Positions 63 through 25,900 of a stretch of 36,479 nt of DNA are shown in pieces. The DNA lies in NCBI GenBank assembly GCA_000320545.1, contig ADNK01000072.1, positions 1-36,479 of the forward strand. Direction: 5' to 3'. The notes under the pieces are model-generated. The model was not told the origin of the DNA, searched no databases, and saw only the letters and a program-made list of their open reading frames with translations. Both the position numbers and the translations under genes were made by a program. How positions within the stretch are numbered: position 1 is the stretch's first letter; each line of letters begins with the position of its first letter. This DNA comes from Bigelowiella natans CCMP2755 (taxonomy: Eukaryota > Protista > Cercozoa).

Positions 63-431
<369 letters not shown>

Positions 432-2756: not shown

Positions 2757-3115
2757 TCATTCTAGGATGTCCATTTTTGCAAGAACCGAGTGCAGATCTG
2801 TGTGGTCCTTGCACACCTTTCCCATGATATGTTCAATTCCCGGGCCTTTCAGAATCACCTTTCCTTCCTTGACTTCTGCAGAAATCTGTACAAATTGTCA
2901 AGTATCCATCGGGTGTGTGTGCATTCATGTACAAACACTTTGCTAAGAACTACCTTAACATCTTCAATTTTATTCAACTCTTTGATGTCATCTGGTTTTG
3001 AGCCACGGCCGGATTTGCAATTCCAGGATGTGAAGGTGATGTTTACCCCACTCTCATTTTTCTCATATGTGCCAACAAATTTATCGGCTCTACCTGTGTG
3101 TTTAGGCCTGTGGGA

Positions 3116-3163
<48 letters not shown>

Positions 3164-3465
3164 CAGAGGGAGAGGGAGGACATGCGAAGAAAGCATGTGT
3201 GCATTGAGTACCATAGAAAATAGCATCACTCCTGTCATCGTTGCCATCTAAGGTAGCGGTAAGGGTAGCGTTGTCGCCCAACGATAGCACCAGGCAGTAG
3301 TCATCATCGTATTCATTGTTTTTCCGCTTGCCGGCTTTGGACTGAGCACATTGCACACATGAGCCAGCAGTTGCACGCACTCTCGCTCTCCCACAAATGC
3401 GCCAAAAAGCAACAACACAAGGTGCGGCCCAAACTACTGTGGACCTGTGCTCGCTTGAAAGACAT
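2757..3465 (-). CDS. Hypothetical protein, 139 aa, 4 exons; possibly a small beta-barrel
   Basis: Exons 3465-3445, 3341-3212, 3093-2954 and 2885-2757 join in phase through GT-AG introns, with accATG context: MSFKRAQSKAGKRKNNEYDDDYCLVLSLGDNATLTATLDGNDDRSDAIFYGRADKFVGTYEKNESGVNITFTSWNCKSGRGSKPDDIKELNKIEDVKISAEVKEGKVILKGPGIEHIMGKVCKDHTDLHSVLAKMDILE*. Confidence 0.7.
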
Positions 3466-3902
3466 GGTGTAGACCTAGATCTGATGGAAAATGGAGAAGG
3501 GGGCTGAAAGGAAAGATTCAGCGAGCCGTTACGTTCTGAGCCGTTCACTCATCGCAGTACCCCTTGCTGTCGTCATTTCGGCGAAAACAGCCAATTTTCC
3601 GTGCAAGTGCAACTCCATCCAATGCTCGAACTCGTAGGGGATTTGCTTTCTGCGACAATCTGTAGTCACACATGCTTTCGCATTATTCAGGTGCATTTAT
3701 TCACCAGAATTTGCCTGAGAGACGCTCTGGTCGTCTGGCGGATACGGTTTTGCCACGGACGGCCGTTACTGATAGAGAAACCGCTCCAGTTGGAACATAT
3801 CTCGATTACATGTACTAGATCTACGAGTAGATCTACATGTACTCATAAGCTGGCTGTTTTACTTACCCTCTACCTCAATCATCGCAGTCATCGCAAAGTA
3901 TA
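3466..3902. promoter_or_regulatory. Probable bidirectional promoter / 5' UTR region between divergent genes
   Basis: About 440 bp separate the divergent ATGs at 3465 (-) and 3903 (+). Each ATG is preceded by a pyrimidine-rich 3' splice-site-like sequence, suggesting 5' UTR introns. Inferred from gene layout only. Confidence 0.4.
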
Positions 3903-6088
3903 ATGTCTGACCTTTTCGAAGCAACAACCAAAAAGGACCTTCCTGAGCTAAAAAGTTTAATTGAGAAAAAGGCTGACGTCAATACGAAGAATGATTATGG
4001 TGGGTAGCATCTGCAGCATTACTATCATTATTTGTTTAATTCATATAAATACGGCAACACCGTATTCAAGGAATGAGACATCGGAAAGATTTCGGCAGCA
4101 GTTGTAGTTCTTGATATTGTATACATACTATCATTACTTTTGTGTCTAATATGAAATCTGTTACCACCAGGTCAAACACCGCTGGTTTTCGGTTCCAAAA
4201 AAGGGGAATTGGAGATCGTCAAGTATCTAGTAGGCATAAAGGCGAACATCGAGGCAAGGGACAATGTAGGTGGGTAGCAGCTGCAGCATTACTAGCGTTT
4301 AGGCAATAATTGCAGTATTGGGTCAATAATAGTAGTGTTGGATTAGTGTTTTAGTGGCAGTACAAGTAATAACAATAGGATTGAGTATATGGGATTGGAT
4401 ATCACCAGGTAATACGGCTTTGATGCAGAGTTCCGACAATGGCCATTTGGAGATCGTCAAGTACCTAGTGGGCATGAAGGCAAATGTCAATGCGAAAGAC
4501 AATGGAGGTGGGCAGCAGCTACAGCATTACTAGCATTTAGGCAGCAGTTGAAGTATTGGGTGAATGATAGCAGTGTTGGATTAGTTTTTTTAGTTGCAGT
4601 ACAAGTAATGGTAAGAGGATTGAGTGGGAAGAGGAGTAGAAGTTGTAGATGTATTGGTATTATGAATCCTGGTAGTAGTAGTAGTAGTAGTAGTAGTTGT
4701 TGTTGTAGTTATGGTAGTAGGATAGAGCACACATGAAGGTTAGTATGGATGGTGGTTGGGAATTATCACGGGTCATGAACGACTCGCTGAGGTTACTGAG
4801 ATATCAGGATGAGGATAGTTCTTCATATTGCATACATGCTATTCTTATTTTTGGGATTAATATGGGTTTGAATATCACTAGGTAATACGCCGTTAATTAA
4901 GAGTTCTCACTGCGGTTACTTGGATATCGCTAAGTACCTGGTTGATATGAAGGCAGACATTGAGCAAATGGACAAAGACGGTAGGTAGCAGCTGCAGCAT
5001 TACTAGCATTTAGGCAGAAGCTGTAGTGTTGGCTGAATAATAGTAGTGTTGAATTGGTTTTTTAGTAGCAGTAGAAGCAATGATAATATGATTGAGTAGT
5101 GAGTAAGAGGAGAAGCTGTAGAGGCATTGGGTTGTGAGAAGCAACACTGATATCTTGAATCATAGTACTACTACTAGTAGTAGTAGTGCTAGTAGTAGTA
5201 ATATATGTTGGTATGGATGGTGGTTGGGAATCGTCACGGATCATGAATGACTCGCTGGGGTTAATTAGATGTTAGTGAGATGATAGTTCTTGAGATGATA
5301 GCTCTTGATATTGCATACATGTTATTGTTAATTTTATTTCTAATATGGGAACGATCATCATCAGAGGCTACGGCGTTACTACATGGTTCTTTCATGAATC
5401 GCATTGAGGTTGTCAAGTACCTGGTTGATAAGAAGGCAAACATCGAGACGAAGAGCAATCGAGGTGGATGGCAGTTGTAGCATTACGAGCATTTAGGCAG
5501 CAGTCGCAGTGTTGAGTAATTGGTAGTAGTGTTGGATTAGTAAGAAATAGAGTAGAAGTAGTACTAGTAGTTCTAGTAGTAGTAGTAGTTGTAGTTGTTG
5601 TTGTTGTTGTGGTAGTAAGATAGAACACACATGAAGGTTAGTGTGGATGGCGGTTGGGAATTATCACGGGTCATGAACGACTCGCTGAGGTTACTGAGAT
5701 AGCAGGATGAGGATAGTTCTTCATATTGCATACATGCTATTCTTATTTTTGGGATTAATATGGGTTTGAATATCACCAGGTAGTACGCCGTTAATATTTG
5801 GATCACAGCAAGGGCATTTAGAGATCATCAAGTATCTAGTAGGCATAAAGGCAAACATCGAGGCAAGGGATGATGGAGGTGGGTAGCAGCTGCAGCATTA
5901 CTAGCATTTAGGCAGCAGCTGTAGTGTTAGGTGAATAATAGTAGTGTTGAATTGGTTTTTTAGTAGCAGTAGAAGCAATGATAATATGATTGAGTAGTGA
6001 GTAAGAGGAGAAGCTGTAGAGGCATTGGGTTGTGAGAAGCAACACTGATATCTTAAATCATAGTAGTAGTAGAGGTATGTAGTAGTAA

Positions 6089-6125
<37 letters not shown>

Positions 6126-7431
6126 GAGATAGAGCACACATGAAGGTTAGCATGGATGGTCGTTGGGAATTGTCGTGGTTCATGAACGACTCGCTGAGGT
6201 TGATTAGATGGTGGTTGGGAATTATCACGGATCATGAATGACTCGCTGAGGTTGATTAGAAGTTAGTGAGATGATAGTTCTTGATATTGCATATATGTTG
6301 TTGTTAATTTTGTATCTAATATGAAATCGGTTACAACCAGGATATACGCCGTTGCATGCGGCTTGTCAACCAGGGCATTTGGAGGTTGTCAAGTACCTGA
6401 TTGATAAGAAGGCAAACATCGAAGCGAGAGACCGTCAAGGTGGATACAAGCTGTAGCATTCTAGCATTTTGGCAGCAGTCGCAGTGTTGGGTGGATGGTA
6501 GTAGGGTTGAATTAGTTTTTAGTGGTAGTAAAAGGAGGAGAAGAAGTAGAGGTATGATGTTGTGAGTAGCGGCACTAGCAATACTGGTAACATGAATCGA
6601 AATAGAATTATGTAGTTGTAGTAGTAGTAATTGTAGCAGTAGTAGTAACAAATGTTGGTATGGATGGTGGTTGGGAATTATCACGGATCATGAATGACTC
6701 GCTGAGGTTAATTGTTAGTGAGATGATAGTTCTTGATATTGCATATATGTTATTGTTAATTTTGTATCTAATATGAAATCGGTTACAACCAGGATATACG
6801 CCGTTGATTTTGGGTTCTCAAGAAGGGCAATTGGAGGTTGTCAAGTACCTGATTGATAAGAAGGCAAACATCGAAGCGAGAGACCGTCAAGGTGGATACA
6901 AGCTGTAGCATTCTAGCATTTTGGCAGCAGTCGCAGTGTTGGGTGGATGGTAGTAGGGTTGAATTAGTTTTTAGTGGTAGTAAAAGGAGGAGAAGAAGTA
7001 GAGGTATGATGTTGTGAGTAGCAGCACTAGCAATACTGGTAACATGAATCGAAATAGAATTATGTAGTTGTATACATGTTATTGTTAATTTTGTATCTAA
7101 TATGAAATCGGTTACAACCAGGTGCTACGCCGTTGATTTTCAGTTCCATTCAAGGCCATTTTGATATCGTCAAACACCTTGTTGATATGGAGGCAAACAT
7201 CAACGCGCAAACGTCGAAAGGTTTTTTGTGTGTTTAAAAATTGCATTATTTATAGTAGGTTGATTTGTTGACTAGAGAATGGTGGCTGATTATGGTATTG
7301 TGCCTCGCAAACGTTGTTTAATTTTCACACCAGGCTATGACGCATTACACTACGCTCAGAAGAGGGGCCATTCAGATATCATTACTTTTCTCAAATCGAA
7401 TAAGGCCTCGGATTGCTGTGTGCTCTTGTGA
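3903..7431 (+). CDS. Ankyrin-repeat protein, 328 aa (N-cap, 8 internal repeats, C-cap), ending in CCVLL prenylation motif
   Basis: Exons 3903-3999, 4171-4269, 4409-4507, 4882-4980, 5365-5463, 5780-5878, 6341-6439, 6793-6891, 7122-7220, 7334-7431. All introns are GT-AG and phase 1; all 8 internal exons are 99 nt and translate to the ankyrin consensus (e.g. GYTPLHAACQPGHLEVVKYLIDKKANIEARDRQ). 987 nt open to TGA. The acceptor at 3887 is in frame, so an additional upstream coding exon cannot be excluded. Confidence 0.93.
4171..7220 (+). repeat. Tandem exon+intron duplication array (units about 240-560 bp)
   Basis: Introns share a 5' block (gcagctgcagcattactagcatttaggcag-like), a (TAG)n/(TTG)n tract, a ~48-nt element and a 3' block (gatagttcttgatattgcata...caccag). 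The first ~180 nt of introns 7 and 8 differ at one position. Confidence 0.92.
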
Positions 7432-7606
7432 AACGGTCATTTATACGCCTGAATAACTCTTCGGCCTACATTATTCTTCTGTGACTGCCCTCTTGTGATG
7501 TAACTTAGCTCTACTTTGTTGTTTACATTCGAATTATCGTGTTTGTTCAGTCCAAACCAAGAGCCTAAATATGCATATATTATATATTGTTAAGTCTATA
7601 TATATA

Positions 7607-7650
<44 letters not shown>

Positions 7651-8584: not shown

Positions 8585-9778
8585 TCACTCATCACTTGAT
8601 GTCTTCCTGCGCCTACGTTTGCCACCGTTAGTCGATGAGCCACCTTGAGAGAGAAGGGCTGCAACAGAGGCCTTAATGTCCTCAGGTTTGATTCCATCTA
8701 ATGTAATGAGCCTCATTCTTCGTTGCGGATCTTTCTCATTTCGTATTGCATCTAATCGGGCAGCTAAGGTGTCCCTCTTTGGAGGTTCTACCAACTTTGG
8801 CAGCTCAGTCTCTGGCTTCTTTTGTAAAGTGACGTACATCCCTGGCCAAAAACAACAGACGAGAAATTTTTTCAATAGCTGTTATCACGCGTTGGTGTCA
8901 GGGGATGAGCGACCAAAAGAATACCCCATTTTTACGGGCTGTGAAACATTTTAGCAATATTCATCGTTCAAATTGTTTTACTAACACCATTGCTTTCAAG
9001 GACATGATATTCTTAGATAGGCATTTTAAAGAACAACTTTAACGACTCATTTCTCACCGTTTTCTTGGCAGATTTTCAGTAGCGCTGATGGCGGAAGGGA
9101 CTTTATTTTCCCATTCGGTGGTAGTATCACTGTTCCTGGCTCCGACATTTGTTTCTTCAGTTTCTCGACATATCCCATTGTAGCTTCATAAGACTCGAAG
9201 GCAACAATGACCTCCTTGGTGCTTCCATCGTCCTGCTGGACAATATTGTAGTAAATCATCTCATTCCCTCCATCAGTGAACGTGATAATGAACACTTCCT
9301 CCGCCGTATTCCAAAACTTAGCGTCTTTTGTTTGCTTCGATCCTCCTAAGACGATTCTCTTCTGCAAGGCTAATCGAATACTGTTAACGACGCCAGAGAG
9401 CACATTTCTGGTTGTTTTGATGATCTGCTGCTCTATCGACGAATCGCTTGCATTATTTTTGGGTTGATCTGGTGAGGTTCCATCCATATCATCGTTTGTA
9501 GCACCGTAAACGAAGAGCCCAGATCGTCTGTTTCGACTCATCGAAGATCTTGTTCGAAAGTTGTCGCGAACGGTGCTCCAACCTTCCTCTCGTTTGGCTC
9601 CAAGGCGAAGGCGCGGACAATTGAGTGCGATCTTCGAAGATATATATCTATTCGAAAGGTATGAGGGAGTGCGGACAGTGGGCTTAGATCCTAGTGCAGG
9701 AACCCAGAAAATGGCTCCATAAAGAAAGATTATAGAGACTGAATGAGGCATCCTTTCCTGATTTCGAGTTGGCGCCAT
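8585..9778 (-). CDS. DUF3110-like protein with signal peptide plus transit-peptide-like leader (probably plastid-targeted), about 325 aa, 2 exons
   Basis: Exons 9778-9058 and 8841-8585 join in phase 1 (G|GTGAG...CCAG|GG). Hydrophobic SVSIIFLYGAIFWVPALG is followed by an R/S-rich stretch. The core VFIITFTDGGNEMIYY...EVIVAFESYEATMGYVEKL...ALLKICQENG resembles the cyanobacterial/plastid DUF3110 pattern as recalled; not searched. Confidence 0.7.
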
Positions 9779-11290: not shown

Positions 11291-12042
11291 TATCTCGCAA
11301 ACGAAAATGAGAGTATCTGCCCCCCACCATCTGTTTCGCCTTCCAGCAGAAGAAGAAGAGTGCGGTGGAGAGTCTCGACCGGCGCTGGGCTATTCAGACG
11401 ATGGAGGACGTCACAAGCCTAGCTGATGCTGATCCAGAAGTAAGGGAGTTTACTCGGTGGATATTGCGCCAGCAGCACGTAATCCGGCAGATGTTCGAAG
11501 CCATGCGACGCCAGACGAAGCGCGTGGCGATAAATAAACAAAAGACGATGAATGCTCTTGTGGAAAAGCTCGAGTTCCAAAACATGCGCATGTCTCTCGG
11601 CACTCGTATGGCAATTCGAATGGCCACACACGCGTTTTTGCGGACAGTGAAGCTCATTAAGCGTATCAGTAAGGATCACTACACCTTCTACGTGGAGGTA
11701 GTTGCTTGTTTAGCCGGGTTGAGAGAGAGTGGTACTCATATAATTATCTTTTGTAACCTCTTCCTCCTCCTACTCCTCCTCCTCCTCTTCCAGGAAATAT
11801 TAGAAATGCTTTCCGTTATGCTGGAGGAAGTACCTAATTTGGGACTGAAGAACTCGCCTGTTTTCAAGTGCTTCAACGGCATTTACGATTTCATCACGTC
11901 ACTCATCCTCTGCGCCAAAACAGATGCGAGAGCCAAGGTACGAAAGTTTTGTATATGGTGTATATATATATATATATATATATATTAATGTGCGCAGCAA
12001 TCGCCACAAATCTTGTACATTGAAACATATATATTTTTTGAT

Positions 12043-13748: not shown

Positions 13749-16700
13749 GCACAGACACCTATATGCAAATGCACATTCTCTTCTGTTGTTTGTGTTCTCC
13801 GAAGAACATGAAAGGGCAGAAAGAGATGAAGATGTCCCCGACCTGCGGTCCGCAGGAAAAGTGGAAAATCCAGCGTTCAGGAGGGGCGGGGTGAGAACTA
13901 AAAGTGCTAGCTAGAGCAGCTGGCATGCACACGACGACGATGCTGCTTATTCTCCATTGTCGCATTTGTGACTTTTTAATGTATAATCTCCGTCGTTTTA
14001 TCGCATCCGCGAGAGGCGTGAGCGAGCAGGAATCTGCCATTTCTCCCTCTCACTCCTCCCCGCCTCTTCCAATCTTAGATTCGGCTCGCGCCCCATCCCT
14101 GGCCTGACCGACGAGAACGAGGAGAAGTCCCCATTATTCACAATCGTAAACTGCTCGACTAGCGTCTCTCTCTGGGCGACTGAGGACGACATCAAAGTGA
14201 AAGGAGTGGGGTTTGGCAACGTTCAGTCCGCGCAGGACGGCGGTTTGGCATTCCGCATTGAGGTGGGCACTAGCAATGAGACTGCCACTGTTTTGCTTCT
14301 ACGATGATGCCATGTATAAAACCCTGCGTCGTTTGACAATACACCTTTGCGAGGAGAAATAATGCCGTCCTCTATCGAGCAGGGTCATCTAGTAGAGTCT
14401 TGATTTAGACAGCATATTCGTAGGAGAAAGAAATTTGTCCTCAAAGTCTTACGTGACTGTATACATACCCCCCCCCCCCCCTTCCTCCCCCTCCCCCACA
14501 ACACGCAAATCCCCATATTAAAAATCGTTAGATTAAGGAAGAGGAAGCACTGTGGGACGATGAAGAAGAAATCGATATTGGGGATAAACCGCTAACACTG
14601 GACTCCGAAGATGCGCTCGAGCGGTTCGGTGTTCCGTTGCTCAAGAAGGCCTCTGCTGTCGCGGGGGGCATATCGACGGCGTCCCGCCTCTCGATGCCCG
14701 CTGACGGCAAACTAGGCGACGAGGAGAAGGCGATTACGTCATCATCCTCCTCGCCCACCCCCCTCTCCAACATTCAGGAAGGCAGTCTCCTCGCGTCGTC
14801 GTCGTCGTCGTCGTACGAGGGTGATTCAGCCGGCGGCGGGGTTGCAGCTAAGACGGCCGCGGTTATGATTCTCGCGTCGCTAGACCGGCTCGTCGGCGCG
14901 GAGAGCATTGGCGTTGGCGAGGTGGGGGGGAGCGATTCCGGGCTGGCGACCGTCTCGAAGCCTCTTTGCATCAACGTTTCAGGCAATACGCTCAAGAGGA
15001 CGCTGAGCATAATCTCGCTGCTCTCGCCTTCGTTCTTCGCTTCGGGAGGCGTATCCGACGACGACTATGTGCCGCAGATGTACATGCTCATTGCCACGCT
15101 GCGCGTCTTGAAGGCCCACATCTACCAGCTCGTGAAGTCGAAGCTGCCGCTGAAATACTTCGAGGTCTCCCTGCTCGATGCTGCCGCTATAAAGAAGCAC
15201 ATCGTAGCGTTTATCCAGGACAAACCTAAGGCACGCACGGGGCGTCACCGCCTCTCCGCGCTCAAGATCGAGGCCATCGTGCAGGCAGAGGCCGCGCAGA
15301 TCTTCGCCGAAGGATTCGAGTTCTTCTTCCAGGCCGTCTCTGACCAGGTCACCTACCTCGCGGACCTGCTGACGAAGAGGCTCAAAACCACACAGCTATC
15401 GAAGGCCGAGCTCACCCTGCTCAAGCTGCTGCTCACCCGCTTCGCGTCGTTCTCCTCCGGCGCTCTGTTGATGGACGAGCTCGAGGGCAAAGGGCAGGTG
15501 GCGGACCACAAGAAGAGTCTCGCGGCGGTGCAAGGGACGCTCGGGCTGCTGCTTGAAGTGGCTGCTGCGGAGGCAGTGAAGGCGATTGAGGAGTTGCGAC
15601 CCGCGAAGGCGGGCAAGTCGCCCGTGATTCTGATCCTGGCCAACCTCCAGAAGCACCTCCTTTCGCGCGCAGGTCAGTGGAAGATCCTATCGGCCGAGGA
15701 GGAGCTGAAGGCGAAGAAGATGCTCAAGGCCAAGAGCAGCGCGGCAGGGAGTGACAGCTCCTGGCGCATTGCCTTCGAGACCCTCCTCGCGTACACGAAG
15801 AACCTGCTCGAATCGTCGCTCAAGGTGCTCGATAGAGCAGCCGCTCGGCTGCGCGATGTGGACGACGCGAAGCAGTTATCAGCGCTGTCCAACGCCGTCC
15901 TCCACGATTCAATGGTAGGCCAGCTTGCACGGCCAATGCTCTCCGCGGTGTCGATGTTCGTGAGCGTGAAACGGCAGTGGGTATCGGCCGCTCTGCTGCC
16001 CTTGATGGCGAAGCTGACCATGCGCTTGGATGCGATTCTGGTGCTCGCAGATCGCGTCCCTGGCTCGAAGAAGAAGGTTCCCGTCACCAAAGTGAGGACC
16101 GCGAACTCCTCCCACCCTTACGTCCCCAACAGGCGCATCGTGGACCATATATCCGTGGCGGGGGCGACGGAGATCCGCGTGGAGTTTGACGCGAGGTGCG
16201 AGACCATGAGCAACACCGACACGCTGCAGCTGTTTGCGAAGCCGGGGAAAGCGTCCCCCCTCACGCCGCCGCTGTTCGGGCCCGCTGCGAAGAAGAAGAG
16301 CGGCGGCGCCGATGCAAAGTCTCCGCGCGCGCCGCGCGACAGCAAGTCGTCTTCCGCCGCTGCTTTTACTGGCGATGCCGACGTGAAGGAGGGAAAGGAT
16401 GAAAAGGACTCGAAGCTGGGCTCCCTAGCTGCGACGACTGCGCCGAACCCTGCAGTAGCATCATCATCATCATCATCATCATCATCACGTAAACCACGTG
16501 CCACAAGGGGCGGCCCTGTGGCACCTACAGCGGCGTCTGTCCCCCCCCCCGCTGCTGCCGCTGCCCCGCGCGCGGCCGAAGTGAAGAGCCCAAAAGTCGA
16601 TGGGGCGGTGGGCGAGGGGAAGAGCGGCTACTGGCCGGCGCAAATCGATGTTTCCGGCTCGAGCTTCTACCTATCCTGGACGACCAATGGCAACGGAGGC

Positions 16701-19396
16701 TGGGGCTTCGGCCTCACCATCAAGGCGAGCGTGATGGAGATCCCGACGGCCTGGGTTCGCAAGATGGCAAAGACCGCGGCCTGGCTGACAGGAGGAATCG
16801 CAGCGACGCTCATACAGGTTGGAGACGTTGAGGCCTCCGAGACGCGCTGCAAGAGCTGGCTTCAGTCGAATCTCTTCAAGGGAGGGCTCAAGGACGGCTG
16901 CCCGCTGCTCCGCGGCATTGCTGGCCCCGAAAGCAGCTTACCCGCTCTGCACGCAGGGCTCGAGAAACTTAAAGAGCTTAAGGATGAGGCGGAGGTGAAA
17001 GAAATCGTCGCCATCGGAGCTGCAGGGACGGGCCGTCGCGAGAGCATTCCTAGTGCAGACGCAAGAGGGCTCGAAGCGTCGGCGGCGGCCTCGTCGTCCT
17101 CTCCCCATTCTTCTCTTTTCGGGAAAGGTCTAACGGGCGAGCTCTTGGGGCAAATCGCCGCAGGGGAGGGGGTGGGCGGATTACTGGTCGCAAAGCTTCG
17201 TAAAATCTGCAAGATACCGCCGGTAATGCTCGCGAGTGTGAAGCCGACAGCCGCGCGGCTGGTAAGGTCTGTATTCGCGCTTCTTCTCTACCACACCGGG
17301 ATGGGGCACACGGCCAGGAAGCTTGTAGAAGAGCAGGAGAAGAAGGAGGAGGAAGAGGGCTCTGAAGCCGACGTCCCCGAGGACATCAAAGCGGTGTTTC
17401 TGAAGGCCTCCGAGATGCAGATCGAGGCGCAGCAGATCAAGGGTCGGAAGGGAATCGAGGGGCTGGCGCAGTTTGAGAAGGAATTCATGATGAAGCTTGA
17501 CCTCGCCGCGAGCCTGAGCATGAGTACGTCGCTTTCCGAAGAGGACGAGGAGGAAAAGAACAGCAGCGAGGTCGGCGGAGGCAGTGCTGGGCCGGAGATG
17601 CCCTCCGACGTACCGCCCTTACTACTGCGCACAAGTTCGTACAACAGACAGCGACAGCTCACGACCAAGCTCAAGAGCGCCGTGCGAGCTCTCCAGCAGA
17701 TGATCTCCGCGAGGACAACCGTGGAGAAGGAGGCCGGCGACGAAAAGCTGATGAGCGAAGTCATCCGTTTCATGCGCATTCGGCCTAATCTCCTCGGGCC
17801 GCTTAAGCACGCGCTGCTATCTTCCCGCTACCGCGCAACGGCGAGGCTGTTGGCATTGAAGCACGTCGCCGAGCTTGTCCGGGAGCTACGAAGCCACTAC
17901 CTCATACCGGAGATGCTGCGCCACGTTTCCCTTTCATTCCGACTCCCGACCAACGCGTCCTCCTCGGCGAGCAAAACCAGCAAAGCGGCCGCTGGGCCCC
18001 AGGCCCCCGTCGCGCCGAGCCTAGCCAAGATCCACTTCCTGTCGCAGCTCGACGTCGCCGGGGAGAGCGTGCGCGGCGCCATCGAGGACAGCTACTTCCT
18101 CATCATCGCCGCCCTCATGACCAAGTCGAAGCTGGACGCGGCTAGCCGCATTCTTCTCTGTGAGCTCTGCAACGTGGAGTGCTCGCAGCGCGACCTCATT
18201 CGTCTCACCCAGGTGGGAATCGTGCCGCTTTTGCGCCAGGCGCTTGTAGAGGTGCTCGTAGGTCTTGCAGGCCGAAACAAGCACTGCAGGGACGTTATTT
18301 GCGCCAATGCCAACTTCGCCGAGGCGTTTGAGGCGTTCCAGGATGGTGAGGATGCAAAGGCGACAACTTCTGCTGCTGCTACCGCTACTGGTACTAGAAC
18401 CCCAACCGGTAAGATAATCCAGGGGGAAGTTGTGCGAGGGCTGGGAGACCGCACGCTGGAGCGCAGATCGTGGAATTCGCGGGCACAAACGTGGGCGCTG
18501 ACCAGGCTGCTCACGTACTTTGTTTCGCAGTATGCGGATGGCGGCAGCAGCAGCAGCAGCAGCAGCGACGAGGAGGAATCGAAGAAGACCGGAGGCATGC
18601 GAAACCTGCACGACGCGGTGATGAAGATGGTAGTCTCGCAGATCGAGGCCCTACTAGAGCTTGGACGAATCTCAACCGCGAAGAAGGGCGCGGGCAGTAG
18701 TAGGGCCCCTGATGCGAAGAAGAGCAGCCGCGGCGGCCCGAACGACGCGAAAATAAAGGCGATTTTGGACCGCTTTTGGAAGGAGGACGACGAAGGCGGA
18801 ACGCGCATTCTGCACAAGTCCCCGAGCGACGATAAGGGGATCTTTCACTTCCTCGGCACTGGACTGGGGAAGGCGGCGTTCCAAAACCCGCACGACAGCG
18901 GCAGGGTGGAGGTCACGTGCTCTGATATCGCCCGCGACGGCAACGAGAAAGCGAGCAAGGTGGTAGGTCGGGAGGCCTTCAACTACACCACCAGGCTCGC
19001 CTCGAAGCCGTTCGTCCAGGTCGATCTCAAGGCGCACAAGGTGCTCATACACGCCTTCCGGGTGAGCTTCCACAGCGCCATCGAGGACAGCAATGTCGTG
19101 ACGTGGGAACTGCAGGGCTCTGCGGACGGAAAGCACTTTGACACGATTGAGACTCACGACTCTAGTGAGCTCTTTGGAGCTTCCTCGGCCGCAGCTGCCC
19201 CTTCCTCCGGGTTCAGTTTCGGGGGCGCTCGTGCTAGGGGAGGGGCGGCACTGGCGCAGCCTTCTTCTGGGTTTCGATTTGGCAGTGGTTCTTCTTCTTC
19301 TTCTTCTTCTTCTTCGGCTTTAGCTGTATCCTCATTAAGGATTACAGCAGCAACATCAACATCATCCTCCGGCTTTAGTTTCGGGTGGCGTCGACC

Positions 19397-19435
<39 letters not shown>

Positions 19436-19950
19436 TACATATTTTAACACACACACACACACACACATTATATATACATATATACAATATCATATGGGGA
19501 GGGGTCAGAGGGGGAAGAAAAGAGAGAGAGAATGAATATCTTTCTCACAACATTTTTTACTACATGCATCGATGACGACTTTGCGTTCTTCCTCAGGGGA
19601 GCGATCATGCCGCAAGTAGCACAGCCCCTGAGGCTAACAACAGCTGCGCCCCGGAGGATCTCAGCACCCCGTAAGGCAGCAGTGAAAAATCCCGCTCCAG
19701 CCGAACTTAGCAAGCTTTATGTGCTGAAGAAGCCATCGACGATTCCTTACTCGTACCTTCGCATTCGTGCCGTGACCCTCAAAGGCACAAAGATTGAATT
19801 CGTACTCCCCCGGCTCGAGATCTTCGGTATCCTTGACCCTCAGAAGAAGGAAACGGTTGCTAAAGCCAAGGTCAGCAGCGACGAACTCCTTCCGATCTCT
19901 CTCGTTAGACAAAATGCGTTACGGAACAATATCGTAAAGTTTCTGCTGTG

Positions 19951-19982
<32 letters not shown>

Positions 19983-22900
19983 TACTATCATCATCCTAAA
20001 CAGCCACTACGATAATACCCCTCCCCCCCCTCCCCCTTTACATTTGCAGGAGAAACCGAGCGATTGGTGGCAGCTACCGGAGGCGAAGCTGCAGCCAAAG
20101 ACACAATGGAGACTAGCAAAGCCGAACTCCGAGTACCCCCTCTCTATCATCATTGGCCAGTTCTCTCGCGAGCGCAAAGGAACTGGGGGAGGGGGGGCGA
20201 GGAGCGCTGGCGGGGCCACCCTAACCTCGTCTGCAAGCATCTTTGCTACACCGCAGCCAGCGCCGCCATTATCGTTCGGAATGAGTAACGAGATAATGAA
20301 TGATCTAGACGCCGAGCTCAGCGCCTACGATGATGCTGAGTTCTCCTCGGAGGAGTCAGACTGCTTCACCGACGAAGATGACATCTTTGAACAGCAGCAG
20401 CAACTCGCAGTGATGCCGAGTGCGGCCGCCGGGGGCGGGGGTCTGTTTGGTGGCGGGGTCCAAACGGGCACGCGTACAGTCGCGTACAACAGAGGCGGTT
20501 TTGGCGTCGGCGGCAGCTTTGGCAGCGGCGGCGGATTTGGCAATCCGCGTCGTGCGGAACAACTCTCGGCCATGGCTGGTAACATCAACTACTTCGGCAT
20601 GTACGGGGTACGGGGGAGCACAGTATATCCCGAGGGGAAGCATCGCATTACGCTTCGCATCGAGATGTCCGGGGCGGGAGGGAAGAATGGCGGTGGCCGC
20701 CGCAGCCGTGGCGGCCGCCGCGCATCGCGGAACCGCGGTGCTAGCCATGGAGGCGGCCGCAGCAGCAAAGGCGCCCCCATCACCCAATTCTGCTTTGTCG
20801 GGTTGCAAGATACAAAGGTAAATGAGAACCTTCAAGCAGGGAGGGGGCCGACTGGCGGACCGATGCCTTACATGAACTATCACTCCGGCACATCGCTCTT
20901 CCAGCGCTCCTCCGGCCTCTTGGTAGCCCAGGGCAATGCGTGCTCGGGGGCTAACCCGCAGAGGAACATCGGCGTCAATATGGGCTGGTTTTGCAGCGGC
21001 GAAAAGCTCACGATCGAGTGGGATACGAGCGGCTCGGGCACGATGCGGTTTTACAAGGACGGCAAGCCAGTCGGGACACCCGTTCCCCTTTACGGGAGCA
21101 TCAAGAACGCGTACCTTGTCGTGGAATGCACGGGGAGCTTCCGCATCACGATGATGACGAGGAAAAAGGCTGAGTCCTCCGAGGACGTTGGCGGTAGCGG
21201 GGAGATATGGGCTCGGCGCTCGCGGACGGCGCACCTCTCGGATGCCTCCAACGGCTGGTACATCGACACCTTCCGTGATATTGGCTTCACCGGCGTCGCG
21301 GCTGTCCGTGATATGCTCCCAGCCAAGGGAGAGGTTGACGCGTACCTGAATCAATTCTTGTGGGTGGTGCTGCGCTGTATCAAGTCGCGGCCGGTGCAGC
21401 AATTATTGTCGCGAACAAACCATCTCCAGACCATGCTCGCTCTGACAGAGGCCTCCAGCTCTAAGGTCCAGCAGATCCTGGCCATCCGCATCGTCCGCAG
21501 CTTGCTCCCCCACAACATCGAGATGGGAGGGGGCGGCGGAAACGACCAAGCTCTGGTGCTTCTCGACTCCTACTTCGAGCGTATCGGTTTCGCAGTGCTC
21601 GGGCACAGCGGCATCCTCTCCGAGTTCGTTCACAACGAGGGCGATGATAACAAAGGTGATAAAAAGCAGCAGCAGCAAGGGGGGCAGCATGACGACATCG
21701 GCGCATCATCGAAGGCGAAGAAAGGGAGCAGCCCCGACACGGAGATAAGCGTGGCCTCCGAGCTCGGCTCGCTCATGCGCTCACTCATGCGAAAGGAGGG
21801 TTGGAGGCCCCTCGTAAACAAAGTCCTCAAGGAGTCGGGAGCAGGTTTGAAAAAGGTTCTAGCGACGCTCAAAGCGGCTGAGGAAGCCAAATCGCGCTCC
21901 GCTGCCTGCACGCAAGATTTCCGGACGACTCTCGCGAAGACCCTCGCAGCCCTCTACGTGCTCATGGGGCACTGCGAGCCGCTGAGGGAGGGCGCACGCG
22001 TGGTCGCGGAGAGCAACGGCGAGGTTGTGGCTGGGACCGTCGTGTGCATTACGAAGATGAACGAGGGCGCGGCCGCTGCGATAATGATGGAGTCGAAGGC
22101 ACAAGGAGGAGGCCAAATGGCGCCGAGCGCTCCTGGAGTCCCCTCGAGCAACGGCAAGGGCAGGACGAGCAAGAAGAAGAAGGGTGGCGTGAACGCCTAC
22201 TCAATCCACTTTGACAACGGCGACTCGGAGGTGATCGTCGACGAGACCAAGCTGGACTTCGTGGCCGATGTAGATCTAGATCGAGGGAACATCGCCGCGG
22301 AGTTCGTGGAGCTGGCGAAACCGATGGTGGCCTTCGTCGAGAAAACGGCCGAGGTAGTCCCGGTCAAGGGCTCTGACCAGCTTGCGCCAGTAACCTCGCT
22401 CCTGCTTCAGCTCCGCGCGTACACGCTGAAGGCGCTCAACTTCCTCCTCAAGGAACACGAGTTTGGGAACGTGCTGCTCGACATGAAATTCGGCACCGTC
22501 CTGAACAAGATCGCCCTCAGCCATACCGACGCCTTCAAGGACTTCGAGTTCCCGTCCCCGTACAATCTGGAGACGCTCGCTGTGCGAACCGGGTGGAAGT
22601 TTCGGGAGCTAGAGCAGAAGAGGGAGGAGGAAAAGTACCTATGGCAGTACTACGGCGGCGAGCTCCACGAGGGCGACCAGAGCGGCATCATCTACTACAT
22701 TGCAACGGACGGCTACAAAGCGCCGTGGAAAAACCCGTGCGACGGCAAGAAGATCGCGGTCACTTTCTCGTCGATGTCCCCCGACGCCGCCTCGGCCTCG
22801 GCGGTGGTTGGCCGCTCGGCAGAGCGCTGTGTGTCGCAGAACAAGCCGAAACAGTCGGTCACCGTCGACCTGCAAAGCTTCCGGGTTAAGCCCACGCACT

Positions 22901-25900
22901 ACACGCTCCGCCATTACAGCAGTGCGAACCAGGAGGCGCTCCGAAACTGGGACCTCATGGGCTCAGTCGACGGTCAGGCATGGAAGGTGCTTAAGAGTCA
23001 TCGTAACGACGCCAAGCTGAGTCAGAAGGGCCAGGCGGCCACGTGGGAGCTCCCCAAGGCCGCCAGGAAGGACTTCTACCAGCAGTTTCGCATCCAGATG
23101 ACCGGGAAGAACTCCAACAACACGTACTATCTCGCCTGCTCTGGCTTCGAGCTCTTTGGCTCCGTGATGAAGAACGACGTGCGCGTGAAACGCCCCGATC
23201 GGTCGGGCGTGGCAGTCGTAGAGGGGGGGGTGGGGGGCGAAAACGAGCGGAAGGCTGTCGCGCGTGTGATGAGCGCCAGCGCTTATCATGGGGAGAGCAT
23301 ATATTGTTGGGCGCAGTACGATGACTACGGTCTGTGTCTCACCGGGCAGAATAACGGCTTGGGCGTCCGCTCTCCGAAGCAAATCGACCAGTCGCTCTTC
23401 AACGACGAGGACATCGTCCAAATCGTCTGCCCCGGATCTCGCGCGGTGGCGCTGACCGCCTCCGGCAACGTCTACTACTGGGGCCAGCCCTTCCAGAGCG
23501 GCGGGGGCTGGGGGTTCGGCGGCTCCGGCGGCCGCATCAACCAGCCTAAGCTCGTGGAGAGCATGAGCGAGCACAAGGTCATCCAGGTGGCTGGAAACTA
23601 CCAGATCCTCCTAATGCTGACGGAGGAGGGCAAGCTCTTCTACCTGGGCTATATGCAGCGGGTCGGCGTTCCAGCGAACCCGAACCAAAGCGAGGCGCAG
23701 GATGTTCCAGGGCTAGAGGAGAAGAAGATTCGCCGCATCGCCACCTCTTCGCAGGGCCAAGCGATCGTCCTGGCGCACACCGATACCAACGAGGTGTACG
23801 TGTGGGGCAATGTTTCGCAGGCCATTTCTTGCCTCATGAGCGATCAGAACTCGAATCCGGTGCCCGGCTTCAACCAGTACAGCAACAAGCAAATCCTGAC
23901 GCCCACCCTTGTCGACGCGCTCTCCGAGCACAAGGCGGACTGGGCGCAGTTCGGCATTGGAGGGCAGACCTTCATGGCCCTCGACGTGAATGGCGACCTG
24001 TACACGACCGGGGCTATGAACCACGGCCACGGCTCCGGCACGCCGGTGAGGGAGCTCACCAAGTTGGACGACTTTGACGGCCACAAGGTGGTTTTCATCT
24101 CCGCGGCCGCTTACGTCTACTATGCTATCACTGACGAAGGACGCCTCTATGCGTGGGGCCAGAACTCCGATTATGGGTGCGGTACAGGAGGACAGGTGCG
24201 CTCGAATGTGCCCACGCCGACGCCTTGCGCGAATCTTGACGGTGAGCGCGTGGTACGGGTCTCGGGCACGGGCAGCAGCGGCCTATGTGTCACGGAAAGC
24301 GGTAATCTGTACAGGTGGGGCTACACGGATAACGCGACGTTGATGGCCCCAACGCGCTACGAGGACATTTGTTCTCTCGGCTATCAGTGGTCATGGATCA
24401 CCGTCGACCCCTCTTCCAACGGCTGCTTTCTTCTCAAGAGCAAACATGATATGCGCGTTCCAAGCAGCCCCACCCCCTTCCCCTTTACGGGGGCTCGAGG
24501 CCGTGCGAAGACGCACTTGCCGTGGTATCCGGACCTCGCCCTTCTGTGCGGCACGTTCGGTTCTTTCCTCGACTCTAAAACGCTACTCCCCAAGGACTAC
24601 GTCAACGAGATCGAAACCCTCTCTGGAGGAAGCGGGGGCGGGGCAGCGCAGCAGGAGAAGGAGAAGAAGAAGAAGAAGAAGAAGGATCAAGACCTGACCA
24701 ACAGCAGCAACTCTTACTCGCTACCTCTCGGGGAGCCTGTCTTCTCTGAGAACGAGGCGAAGTTCCTCCCCCTGGGGGACAAGGCGCAGCTTTCCGCTCG
24801 CATCCGCTTTATGGCAGGAGGTAAGGAAGCCGGTTCTTCCGATTCCCAAGATACATCTTGGTTTGAGGACGCTATCGCTGAGCAGGCAGAGGGGCAGAGC
24901 GTATTCCTCCTTCCCTTCACCATGTCCATCCGCATCAAGCCCAGGCAGCAGTCTAGCATCCCCCCCGCAGTTAAGGCGGCAAAGGGAGCCGGCAAAGAGG
25001 GCTTTAACCCGTTCGGGGGGTCGGACGCATCGACGCCAGCAGCAGATGCGAAACAGGACGTAGCAGCAGCAGCAGCAGGAGGAGGAGGAGGAGGAGGAGG
25101 AAAAGGAGCCAAACAGAGTGAAGGCCCGGGAGCAGCATCCTCGAGTCTAATCAGTAACAATGACGAGAAAATCAGTGTCGTGCTTTGTAGAATGGTGCTT
25201 CCTGTGGCGGGCGGAGAAGGAGGCGCGAACTACACCGTGGTTGAGGTTTTAGCGAACCCCTCCCTCTCGCGACTGCACCTCCGACTCATCTCGAAGAGCG
25301 GCGAGAAGCTGACGATGTTCCGTCACAAACAGACCTCTGACGCATTCGCCTCGAATAACGCTCAGGACGTGAAAGCGAAGGACATGGATATCGGCGACGG
25401 TAGCCACTCGATCACGATCGTAGGCGGGGTGAATGCAGAGGTCTCTGGTTACGTCGATGACAATCTCGTCCTACAGGTCGACACAAAGCTGCCCAGCGAG
25501 ACGCTCGATGCTGAGGAAAAGGGGCGGCTCGAAAAGGCCGTTGCGGAGACCGTCAAAACCCACAAGGAGGAGGTCTTGCTCACGTTTGCCAGCGGGTGCA
25601 ACGCGTGGGTGCGGGACGCTGGATTCTGGAAGTTCGCAGGCGATGAGGACTTCGTGAAACGCGTCGCCTCATGCGGCCTGGCATTCCTCGACAAAGATCT
25701 CACCGACGTCGAGTCTGCGCTGCAGAAGGTGCAAACGGTTGATTTCGACGCGCAAGCCGAGGCCAAGGAGCTCACAATGGGTATCATCCTCGGAGGAAAT
25801 GGCGGTTTCCTCCCCCGCGAAAACAGTACTAACAATCGGCACGACCCAAACATCAAAGAACAGGAGGGAGCTGCTGCCGGCGCTGACAAATCATCATCAG

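What the first reader, a model, noticed from the sequence alone, without database searches (positions are those of the whole stretch)
3903..7431. Natural DARPin-like cassette gene: one ankyrin repeat per symmetric 99-nt exon, caps on terminal exons, lipid anchor
Seen: 8 internal exons of exactly 99 nt, all phase 1-1, so any can be skipped, duplicated or swapped without frameshift. The framework (T[PA]L, [LIF][ED][IV]xK[YH]L, A[ND][IV]) is constant while positions 2, 6-7, 10-11 and 32-33 vary strongly (10-11: KK, DN, HC, FM, QQ, QP, QE, IQ; 6-7: VF, MQ, IK, LH, IF, HA, IL, IF). Established: positions 2, 10-11 and 32-33 are the beta-turn and helix-1 residues randomised in designed ankyrin repeat proteins, and one-repeat-per-exon shuffling is described for brown algal LRR-ROCO and NB-ARC-TPR candidate immune receptors. 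Inference: a diversifying, membrane-tethered intracellular recognition protein in a protist. Caveat: repeat-aligned exons alone also occur in ordinary ankyrin genes; the homologous introns and focused variation are what set this one apart.
Basis: partly seen in the sequence, partly recalled or inferred. Interest (0 to 1): 0.85.

Follow-up and report, generated by a model that had tools for sequence, protein, structure and literature searches.

The report
One-repeat-per-exon ankyrin cassette gene
This is a real 10-exon algal gene for a small, probably lipid-anchored ankyrin-repeat binding protein, an outlying member of a large family in this genome whose one-repeat exons are copied, lost and varied mainly at the binding-surface residues.

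Summary
Window 3903-7431 (+) carries a 10-exon GT-AG gene: eight internal exons of exactly 99 nt, all phase 1-1, each one ankyrin repeat, plus cap exons and a C-terminal CCVLL (canonical geranylgeranyl CaaX).

The introns are homologous. Within this gene their flanks are more alike (75-78%) than the exons (65%). Two unit pairs are mosaics: 97-99% identical introns surround a strongly divergent exon patch.

The gene has no close copy, and its CaaX exon is unique in the genome. It is a divergent member of a large family: at least 150 family-type cassettes (842 first-look candidates) and at least 23 N-cap exons.

In 20 paralogous loci, eight positions (2, 6, 7, 10, 11, 31-33) are hypervariable. 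Their nonsynonymous divergence is 1.6-3 times the synonymous and intron divergence. The framework is under purifying selection.

An intronless retro-pseudogene joins family exons exactly at the predicted splice junctions. Near-identical segmental duplicates carry 7, 2 and 2 cassettes.

No RNA reads could be obtained, so isoforms are untested. The recognition or immune role and the lipid anchor are inferences.

First-stage notes flag similar arrays elsewhere in this genome. The closest analogues are the exon-shuffled LRR/TPR genes of Ectocarpus and the internally conserved ANK repeats of fungal NLRs. I class this as a new variant of a known kind.

The parts
3903..3999 (+). Exon 1: start codon and N-terminal capping half-repeat (32 codons plus 1 base)
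   Evidence: The N-cap exon is conserved in at least 23 family genes, and the window copy is 57% identical to a typical one.
4171..4269 (+). Exon 2: ankyrin cassette, 99 nt, phase 1-1
   Evidence: Pfam Ank 21.3 bits against a cut-off of 21.1.
4409..4507 (+). Exon 3: ankyrin cassette, 99 nt, phase 1-1
   Evidence: Pfam Ank 33.3 bits.
4882..4980 (+). Exon 4: ankyrin cassette. Bases 4898-4980 form a patch with 35 mismatches in 83 aligned columns (about 42% divergent) against exon 6, inside intron flanks that are 97-98% identical.
   Evidence: 35 mismatches in 83 columns against 8 in 322 flank columns, Fisher P = 4e-20.
5365..5463 (+). Exon 5: ankyrin cassette; the split first codon gives E instead of G
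5780..5878 (+). Exon 6: ankyrin cassette; partner of exon 4 in the mosaic unit pair
6341..6439 (+). Exon 7: ankyrin cassette. The 24-nt patch 6355-6378 (codons 6-13) differs at 9 bases from exon 8, and all changes are nonsynonymous.
   Evidence: No donor for the patch exists elsewhere in the genome; the best match is 81%.
6793..6891 (+). Exon 8: ankyrin cassette, a recent tandem duplicate of exon 7; matching patch at 6807-6830
   Evidence: 2 mismatches in about 333 bases outside the patch.
7122..7220 (+). Exon 9: ankyrin cassette, 99 nt, phase 1-1
7334..7431 (+). Exon 10: C-terminal capping repeat, then CC-V-L-L (CaaX at 7417-7428) and stop at 7429-7431
   Evidence: Weak Pfam Ank match. This exon is unique in the genome. 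Paralogues carry a charged ER/K-rich tail instead.
4690..4881 (+). 3' module of intron 3, near-identical to 5588-5779 (intron 5)
   Evidence: (97% over 150 nt).
4981..5170 (+). 5' module of intron 4, near-identical to 5879-6068 (intron 6)
   Evidence: 5 mismatches in about 180 nt.
6262..6620 (+). Duplicated unit (end of intron 6, exon 7, start of intron 7), repeated at 6714-7072
   Evidence: (family D4, 97%).

Best explanation
The locus is a working nuclear gene of a eukaryotic alga. Earlier notes of this scan call the genome Bigelowiella natans; I did not verify that here. The gene encodes a 328-residue all-ankyrin protein made of an N-cap, eight internal repeats and a C-cap. It ends in CCVLL, a canonical CaaX box that should be geranylgeranylated and so hold the protein on the cytosolic face of a membrane. 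The protein has no signal peptide-like start and no other domain, so it most likely acts as a binding or adaptor module. The gene was built, and is still being remodelled, by tandem duplication of exon-plus-intron units and by recombination or short-tract conversion between those units. It is a divergent member, without a close copy, of a lineage-specific family of hundreds of such 99-nt cassettes. In that family the fold-determining framework is kept by purifying selection. Eight residues on the canonical ankyrin binding face (beta-turn and first helix) change faster than silent and intron sites, so almost every cassette shows a different surface. The family therefore behaves as a germline repertoire of intracellular binders under diversity-enhancing evolution. 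Shown here: the gene structure, the family, the rate pattern, the mosaics and the variation in cassette number. Inferred: expression of this particular gene, its lipidation, and what it binds.
For: Gene model: 10 exons, all GT-AG, open frame, eight 99-nt phase 1-1 exons, with Pfam Ank hits on single exons.

Family size: 217 DNA matches including introns. There were 842 first-look candidates; all 150 scored reached at least 68 bits, and most lie in open frames of 38-64 aa, as expected for one repeat per exon. At least 23 N-cap exons were found.

Variability: entropy is 2.1-3.5 bits at positions 2, 6, 7, 10, 11 and 31-33, and below 1.4 bits elsewhere. Among 85 cassettes there are 76 different surface signatures, while one framework version recurs 19 times.

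Rates: along the unit, pi is 0.05-0.1 in the framework, about 0.2 in introns and 0.5-0.75 in variable codons. In 36 independent pairs, K(intron) is 0.091, pS 0.144, pN(framework) 0.043 and pN(variable) 0.285 (31 of 36 pairs, sign test P = 1e-5). Pairing by closest exons, which is conservative, gives pN(variable) 0.184 against pS 0.117 (Fisher P = 5e-4).

Within the window gene: exons are 65% identical and intron flanks 75-78%; the exon is lower than both flanks in 20 of 28 pairs. Framework dN/dS is about 0.23. The two mosaic unit pairs are shown.

Transcription and splicing of the family: the intronless retro-pseudogene L030:4118-4680 joins N-cap, cassettes and C-cap exactly at the predicted junctions.

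Turnover: segmental duplicates with 97-97.6% identical flanks carry 7, 2 and 2 cassettes with different surfaces. Dead cassettes occur, one with an AT donor and others truncated.

CaaX: CVLL is the canonical geranylgeranylated box of yeast Rho1 (PMC11304957). Prenyltransferase alpha-subunit repeats and ICMT are encoded in the genome.
Against: No orthologue or second strain was available to compare.

The window gene is the least library-like member. Its repeats are only 52% identical, its framework dS is about 1 (saturated), and it has no close paralogue (best 68-73% DNA identity). It may therefore be an old gene with a fixed function.

The excess of nonsynonymous change is modest under the conservative pairing (omega about 1.3-1.6). 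The hypervariable set was chosen partly from the same data. The a-priori DARPin set gives the same direction, but its per-pair sign tests are not significant under the conservative pairing.

Gene conversion breaks the assumptions of pairwise dN/dS, and intron similarity may partly reflect splicing constraint.

The CaaX is not conserved in any paralogue, and a four-residue motif can arise by chance.

No ligand, effector domain or phenotype is known.
Confidence: 0.6

Rival explanations
1. This is an ordinary housekeeping ankyrin adaptor. The repeats arose by old tandem duplication and each has since settled on its own fixed partner-binding residues. Surface positions differ because they are unconstrained or specialised, as in any ankyrin protein. 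The intron similarity comes from neutral gene conversion and splice-signal constraint, not from selection for diversity.
For: The window gene has no close copy. Its repeats are anciently diverged, with framework dS about 0.96 and 52% amino-acid identity. Variable surface positions and a conserved framework are generic to ankyrin repeats; that is how the DARPin consensus was derived (PMC8683736).
Against: Family-wide, pN at the surface sites exceeds both pS and intron divergence. Paralogues with 97% identical flanks differ at nearly all surface residues and in cassette number. In this gene, the very recent exon 7/8 duplicate has 9 changes, all nonsynonymous, in 24 nt, against 2 in about 333 nt.
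Confidence: 0.25
2. A dedicated mutational mechanism, rather than selection on ordinary mutations, makes the variation. Candidates are templated micro-conversion from a pool of donor cassettes, somatic or programmed cassette assembly as in lamprey VLRs, or a local hypermutator such as the TpA-specific one reported in B. natans.
For: The divergent patches have sharp edges inside near-identical units. Variable codons carry multi-nucleotide changes in 63 of 158 cases. The two variable patches of an exon are almost unlinked (rho about 0.11-0.17). A local hypermutation process exists in this species (bioRxiv 10.64898/2026.01.13.699255).
Against: No donor for the exon 7 patch exists in the assembly; the best match is 81%. 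Changes in variable codons are mostly transversions and are no more often at TpA sites than intron differences are (32% against 43% of differences; 134 tv against 103 ts). Only one surface signature is shared between loci. No orphan or reverse-strand cassettes lie in this gene's introns. Nothing here bears on somatic events.
Confidence: 0.07
3. The locus is a decaying or unexpressed copy of the family, and its open frame is a leftover.
For: No expression data could be obtained. The family does contain pseudogenes and dead cassettes: L030; a stop in the N-cap of L025; cassettes with lost donors.
Against: All 18 splice sites and a 328-codon frame are intact across repeats whose silent sites are saturated. 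That, together with framework dN/dS of about 0.23, requires long purifying selection.
Confidence: 0.05

Closest known systems
Ectocarpus LRR-ROCO and NB-ARC-TPR candidate immune receptors (Zambounis et al. 2012, PMC3341825; also PMC11378527)
   Same: One repeat per frame-preserving exon of constant length. A multigene family with gene birth and death. Inactivated exons occur. Positively selected sites lie on the ligand-binding face. The organism is an alga. (One search compared.)
   Different: The repeat type here is ankyrin (99 nt) rather than LRR (72 nt) or TPR. There is no ROC-COR, NB-ARC or other signalling domain; the proteins are caps plus repeats plus a short tail. No cassettes were seen on the non-coding strand of this gene. 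The host is a rhizarian, not a brown alga. Here the introns are more conserved than the exons.
Highly internally conserved ANK/TPR/WD repeats of fungal NLRs (Dyrka et al. 2014, PMC4986451)
   Same: Ankyrin repeats have a near-invariant framework. A handful of hypervariable, positively selected positions lie on the concave face (inner helix and beta-hairpin). Repeat number varies, and concerted evolution acts within and between genes.
   Different: Fungal repeats are not split one per exon and sit behind a NACHT/NB-ARC domain and an effector domain. The window gene does not reach the 85% internal identity criterion (52%); its paralogues reach 72-97%.
Designed ankyrin repeat proteins (DARPins)
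   Same: The architecture is N-cap, 33-residue internal repeats, C-cap. Solved DARPins and consensus ankyrins are among the best sequence matches in the PDB for a family fragment. Five of the six randomised positions coincide with the hypervariable ones.
   Different: DARPins are man-made. The natural family also varies positions 6, 7 and 31, which are framework H, L and D in DARPins, and keeps position 30 conserved. The helix-1 motif here is TPL-x-x-GS rather than TPLHLAA.
CaaX-geranylgeranylated proteins such as yeast Rho1 (CVLL)
   Same: The four-residue C-terminal box is identical. The genome encodes prenyltransferase alpha-subunit repeats and ICMT.
   Different: The carrier is an ankyrin stack, not a small GTPase. 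There is no polybasic stretch; a second cysteine precedes the box. Lipidation was not tested.
Human ankyrin-R/B membrane-binding domain (24 ANK repeats; PDB 4rlv, 7tw3)
   Same: These are the best-scoring solved relatives by sequence. Their genes are also known, from my memory and not tested here, to encode many repeats on 99-nt exons.
   Different: They are single conserved genes with spectrin-binding and death domains. They are not an expanding family with hypervariable surfaces.

Membership tests
Ankyrin repeat (Pfam PF00023, clan Ank) | 33-residue repeat matching the Ank profile above the curated threshold | tested here: met
   Five single exons were scanned and all score 21.3-42.3 bits against a cut-off of 21.1.
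Ankyrin repeat (Pfam PF00023, clan Ank) | Helix-turn-helix plus beta-hairpin stack in three dimensions | tested here: inconclusive
A single-sequence AlphaFold2 model of a contiguous family fragment (L030:4273-4611) had mean pLDDT 56.6 and is not usable. Sequence matches to solved ankyrins and DARPins are strong, E down to 1e-77.
CaaX-prenylated proteins (GGTase-I substrates) | Cysteine at -4, two aliphatic residues, and L at the C-terminus | tested here: met
   The frame ends C-V-L-L-stop, identical to the canonical box of yeast Rho1.
CaaX-prenylated proteins (GGTase-I substrates) | Modifying enzymes present in the organism | tested here: met
   PPTA repeats at C3195 and ICMT at C1043 and C1364 score above Pfam cut-offs.
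CaaX-prenylated proteins (GGTase-I substrates) | Motif conserved among relatives, and lipid actually attached | tested here: not met
   No paralogue has it. Attachment cannot be tested with these tools.
Exon-shuffled repeat receptor families (Ectocarpus type) | One repeat per symmetric exon of constant length, in many paralogous arrays | tested here: met
Exon-shuffled repeat receptor families (Ectocarpus type) | Excess nonsynonymous change at binding-face codons | tested here: met
   Pairwise counts on independent pairs show it, modestly under the conservative pairing. No codon-model likelihood test was run.
Exon-shuffled repeat receptor families (Ectocarpus type) | Repeat array fused to a signalling domain (ROC-COR or NB-ARC) | tested here: not met
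   Only Ank was found on the exons. Paralogue tails are charged helices, not domains.
Fungal-NLR-type highly internally conserved repeats | More than 85% identity between repeats over at least 100 residues | tested here: not met
   The window gene shows 52% overall and 64% in the framework. Paralogous arrays show 72-97%.
Fungal-NLR-type highly internally conserved repeats | Repeat-number polymorphism | tested here: inconclusive
   Three segmental duplicates with 97% identical flanks carry 7, 2 and 2 cassettes. No second strain or haplotype of the window gene was available.
Somatically assembled cassette receptors (VLR-like) | An incomplete germline gene completed from flanking donor cassettes in somatic cells | not testable with these tools
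   The germline gene is complete. No donor cassettes lie in or beside it.

The most novel reading that the evidence does not exclude
The family, including this membrane-anchored member, could be a germline-encoded intracellular recognition repertoire of a unicellular rhizarian alga, a natural ankyrin binder library. In this reading the conserved introns serve as recombination and splicing guides, so that frame-neutral cassettes can be exchanged, duplicated or skipped. The targets would be fast-evolving, for example proteins of the ChlorV giant viruses, to which B. natans strains show strain-specific resistance (bioRxiv 10.1101/2025.11.19.688996).
Probability: 0.15. Interest if true: 0.85.

Novelty: new variant of a known kind. 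Interest (0 to 1): 0.6.

Why it matters
Rapidly diversifying repeat-cassette families are taken as signs of innate immune recognition in plants, animals, fungi and brown algae. Almost nothing comparable is described for Rhizaria. In 16 papers that mention both Bigelowiella natans and ankyrin I found none on this family.

Here the pattern is unusually clean. There are hundreds of frame-neutral 99-nt exons and an almost invariant scaffold. Among 85 cassettes there are 76 different binding surfaces. The introns are better conserved than the coding sequence.

If the family binds variable ligands, it offers a tractable system in a culturable alga with known giant viruses. It could be used to ask whether protists keep germline binder repertoires. 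It would also be a natural counterpart to engineered DARPin libraries.

The window gene adds a variant with a lipid anchor. That suggests some members work at a membrane.

Tried and rejected

2. The exons were joined only inside a local script to check the reading frame. All searches used single exons or contiguous references.

3. A profile of 88 cassettes was searched against 1.84 billion representatives. The best 150 hits were giant generic multi-ankyrin proteins from other organisms, ranked by summed repeat scores. The family's own annotated proteins and close relatives in other species were not recovered. This says nothing about their absence.

4. A single-sequence structure prediction of a contiguous family fragment gave mean pLDDT 56.6. 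I discarded it and ran no fold search.

5. Mobile-element ("introner") origin of the introns: rejected. The intron module occurs only in this gene and four paralogous arrays.

6. TpA-specific hypermutation as the source of variation: no signature was found.

7. A donor for the exon 7 patch: none in the assembly.

The family statistics rest on 19 other loci and 85 cassettes.

9. The species name was not verified. 18S genes were located, but no reference set was available to compare them with.

10. ORFs upstream and downstream of the gene (192-650, 2790-3251, 9047-9778, 11365-11988) gave no meaningful Pfam match; the first two are low-complexity sequence.
Full report
THE OBSERVATION.

- Exon 1 is 3903-3999.
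- Eight internal exons of 99 nt lie at 4171, 4409, 4882, 5365, 5780, 6341, 6793 and 7122.
- The last exon is 7334-7431.
- All nine introns are GT...AG.
- Every internal exon begins with two bases of a split codon and ends with one. Any of them could therefore be removed, copied or exchanged without shifting the frame.

The joined frame is open for 328 codons. I joined the exons only inside a local script to check the frame.

Single exons score above Pfam's gathering threshold for the ankyrin repeat.

The first exon encodes a helical half-repeat (N-cap). The last encodes a C-cap followed by CC-V-L-L and a stop.

THE INTRONS.

The introns are homologous to each other. The intron module is not a dispersed element: it occurs only in this gene and four paralogous arrays.

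Within the gene the exons are less alike than the introns.
- Exons are 65% identical at the nucleotide level.
- The 70 nt of intron on either side are 75% and 78% identical.
- The exon is the less conserved part in 20 of 28 unit pairs.
- Framework codons have dS of about 0.96 and dN of about 0.22.

The repeats are therefore old and under purifying selection for the fold, while the intron flanks are either constrained or homogenised.

Two unit pairs are mosaics.
- Exons 4 and 6: about 320 aligned bases of intron and exon start differ at 8 positions. An 83-column patch, from codon 6 to the donor site, differs at 35 positions, including silent ones (Fisher P = 4e-20).
- Exons 7 and 8 are a very recent tandem duplicate, with 2 mismatches in about 333 bases. 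A 24-nt patch (codons 6-13, the first helix) differs at 9 bases. These change six residues, and none is silent (P = 3e-10). No other place in the genome carries that patch; the best match is 81%.

THE FAMILY.

The genome (G000, 91.4 Mb in 3736 contigs) holds many relatives.
- The gene's DNA, introns included, finds 217 matches at 65-80% identity.
- A profile of cassettes finds 842 first-look candidates. All 150 that were scored reach at least 68 bits, and most lie in open frames of only 38-64 residues, as expected for one repeat per exon.
- At least 23 N-cap exons are present.

Their introns are about 312 nt or about 80 nt long. All arrays start with a conserved N-cap exon and end with a conserved C-cap exon.

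The paralogues continue into a charged ER/K-rich tail rather than a CaaX box. The window's last exon is unique in the genome.

The window gene is the outlier of the family. Its repeats are 52% identical (framework 64%). Other arrays show 72-97% overall and 83-100% in the framework.

RATES.

Across 93 cassettes, entropy is 2.1-3.5 bits at positions 2, 6, 7, 10, 11, 31, 32 and 33, and below 1.4 bits elsewhere.

Along an aligned exon-intron-exon unit, nucleotide diversity falls into three classes:
- about 0.05-0.1 in framework codons;
- about 0.2 in introns;
- 0.5-0.75 in the variable codons.

I ran two sets of independent pairs.

| Pairing | n | K(intron) | pS | pN(framework) | pN(variable) | Test |
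|---|---|---|---|---|---|---|
| Closest introns | 36 | 0.091 | 0.144 | 0.043 | 0.285 | 31 of 36 pairs pN(variable) > K(intron), P = 1e-5 |
| Closest exons (biased against the hypothesis) | 35 | 0.122 | 0.117 | about 0.04 | 0.184 | Fisher vs synonymous P = 5e-4 |

With positions defined beforehand as the DARPin-randomised set, the direction is the same. The per-pair sign tests are not significant under the conservative pairing.

Framework codons lying between the variable ones are as constrained as the rest. Conversion tracts alone therefore cannot explain the pattern.

Changes in variable codons are mostly transversions and are not concentrated at TpA. This argues against the TpA-specific hypermutator reported for B. 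natans.

Among 85 cassettes there are 76 different eight-residue surfaces, whereas one framework version recurs 19 times.

TURNOVER AND EXPRESSION OF THE FAMILY.

Three loci (L020, L022, L028) share 97-97.6% identical downstream flanks, yet carry 7, 2 and 2 cassettes with different surfaces.

Dead cassettes occur: one has an AT donor and two are truncated.

L030:4118-4680 is an intronless copy. In it the N-cap, three cassettes and the C-cap are joined exactly at the predicted junctions. It now carries a frameshift and a premature stop. This retro-pseudogene is fossil evidence that family genes are transcribed and spliced as modelled.

THE ANCHOR.

CVLL is the canonical geranylgeranylated box of yeast Rho1 (PMC11304957). 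The genome encodes prenyltransferase alpha-subunit repeats and ICMT. The extra cysteine just before the box could carry a second lipid; that is inference. Because no paralogue shares the motif, its function rests on the motif alone.

COMPARISON WITH KNOWN SYSTEMS.

The alignment of a contiguous family fragment to solved structures puts ankyrin-R/B and many DARPins at the top. In the DARPin D12 repeats shown there, the differing positions are 2, 10, 11, 30, 32 and 33 in this register. Five of these six are among the family's eight hypervariable positions (P = 0.0015).

The family also varies 6, 7 and 31, and keeps 30 conserved.

One repeat per frame-neutral exon, with positive selection on the binding face, is described for LRR-ROCO and NB-ARC-TPR genes of Ectocarpus (PMC3341825). 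Near-invariant ankyrin repeats with hypervariable concave-face residues, repeat-number polymorphism and concerted evolution are described for fungal NLRs (PMC4986451).

The present family combines the two features in a different lineage and without any NOD or GTPase domain. I found no paper describing it.

VERDICT.

The cassette architecture, the caps, the CaaX motif and the focus of variation on the binding face are real, and the family shows diversity-enhancing evolution. However, this gene is its oldest-looking member and has no close copy. Isoforms, lipidation and any recognition role are untested.

First-stage notes of this scan flag similar arrays on other pieces of the same genome. The phenomenon is therefore genome-wide rather than special to this window.

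The species name comes from those notes and was not verified here.

Noticed in passing
window 14637-19403 and 19948-31878 (+): Two very long open frames (1588 and 3976 aa) lie in a 60% GC block, against about 40-45% GC around the ankyrin gene. The second carries F5/8 type C, RCC1-like, UBA-like, SPRY and HECT domains, so it looks like a HERC-like giant E3 ubiquitin ligase. The first has no Pfam match and may be the 5' part of the same gene, separated by a short low-GC intron near 19400-19950.
   Followed up: partly
L030:4118-4680 (G000:C970:14118-14680): An intronless retro-pseudogene of a family member, most similar in its tail to the gene in L027. It has a one-base deletion in the first cassette and a premature TAG in the tail.
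   Followed up: yes
L020, L022, L028 (G000:C2939, C2069, C554): Segmental duplicates of a family gene share several kb of 94-97% identical flank but carry 7, 2 and 2 cassettes.
   Followed up: yes
L018, L024, L026, L029 and other last exons: Family tails are tandem copies of a charged 18-19-residue ER/K-rich unit whose copy number differs between genes (about 1 to 6). This is a second length-variable repeat, and it looks like a single alpha-helix or coiled-coil spacer.
   Followed up: no
L029 (- strand, index 5130); L016 (index 3506); L026 (index 4341): One cassette is intact in sequence but has an AT in place of the GT donor. Two others are truncated at the 3' end. These are inactivated exons left inside the arrays.
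   Followed up: partly
G000:C1827:13845-14039, C2038:1719-2009, C2040:666-761: Family-type repeats lie in open frames of 179-316 aa. These are arrays without introns between repeats, or further retrocopies.
   Followed up: no
window 4001-7000: There is a strong positive GC skew (+0.34 to +0.47). The introns are G/T-rich and C-poor, full of (GTA)n/(GTT)n runs and therefore of stop codons in all frames.
   Followed up: no
window 63-134, 256-300, 1279-1331, 7590-7650: Long (TA)n microsatellites, some flanked by (CA)n, (GA)n or (CT)n, lie on both sides of the gene. The upstream 'ORFs' 192-650 and 2790-3251 are low-complexity artefacts.
   Followed up: partly
window 3800-3850: An imperfect palindrome containing CTAGATCTAC / GTAGATCTAC lies about 60-100 nt upstream of the start codon. 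It could be a promoter element, or related to the CTAG insertion scars noted elsewhere in this genome.
   Followed up: no
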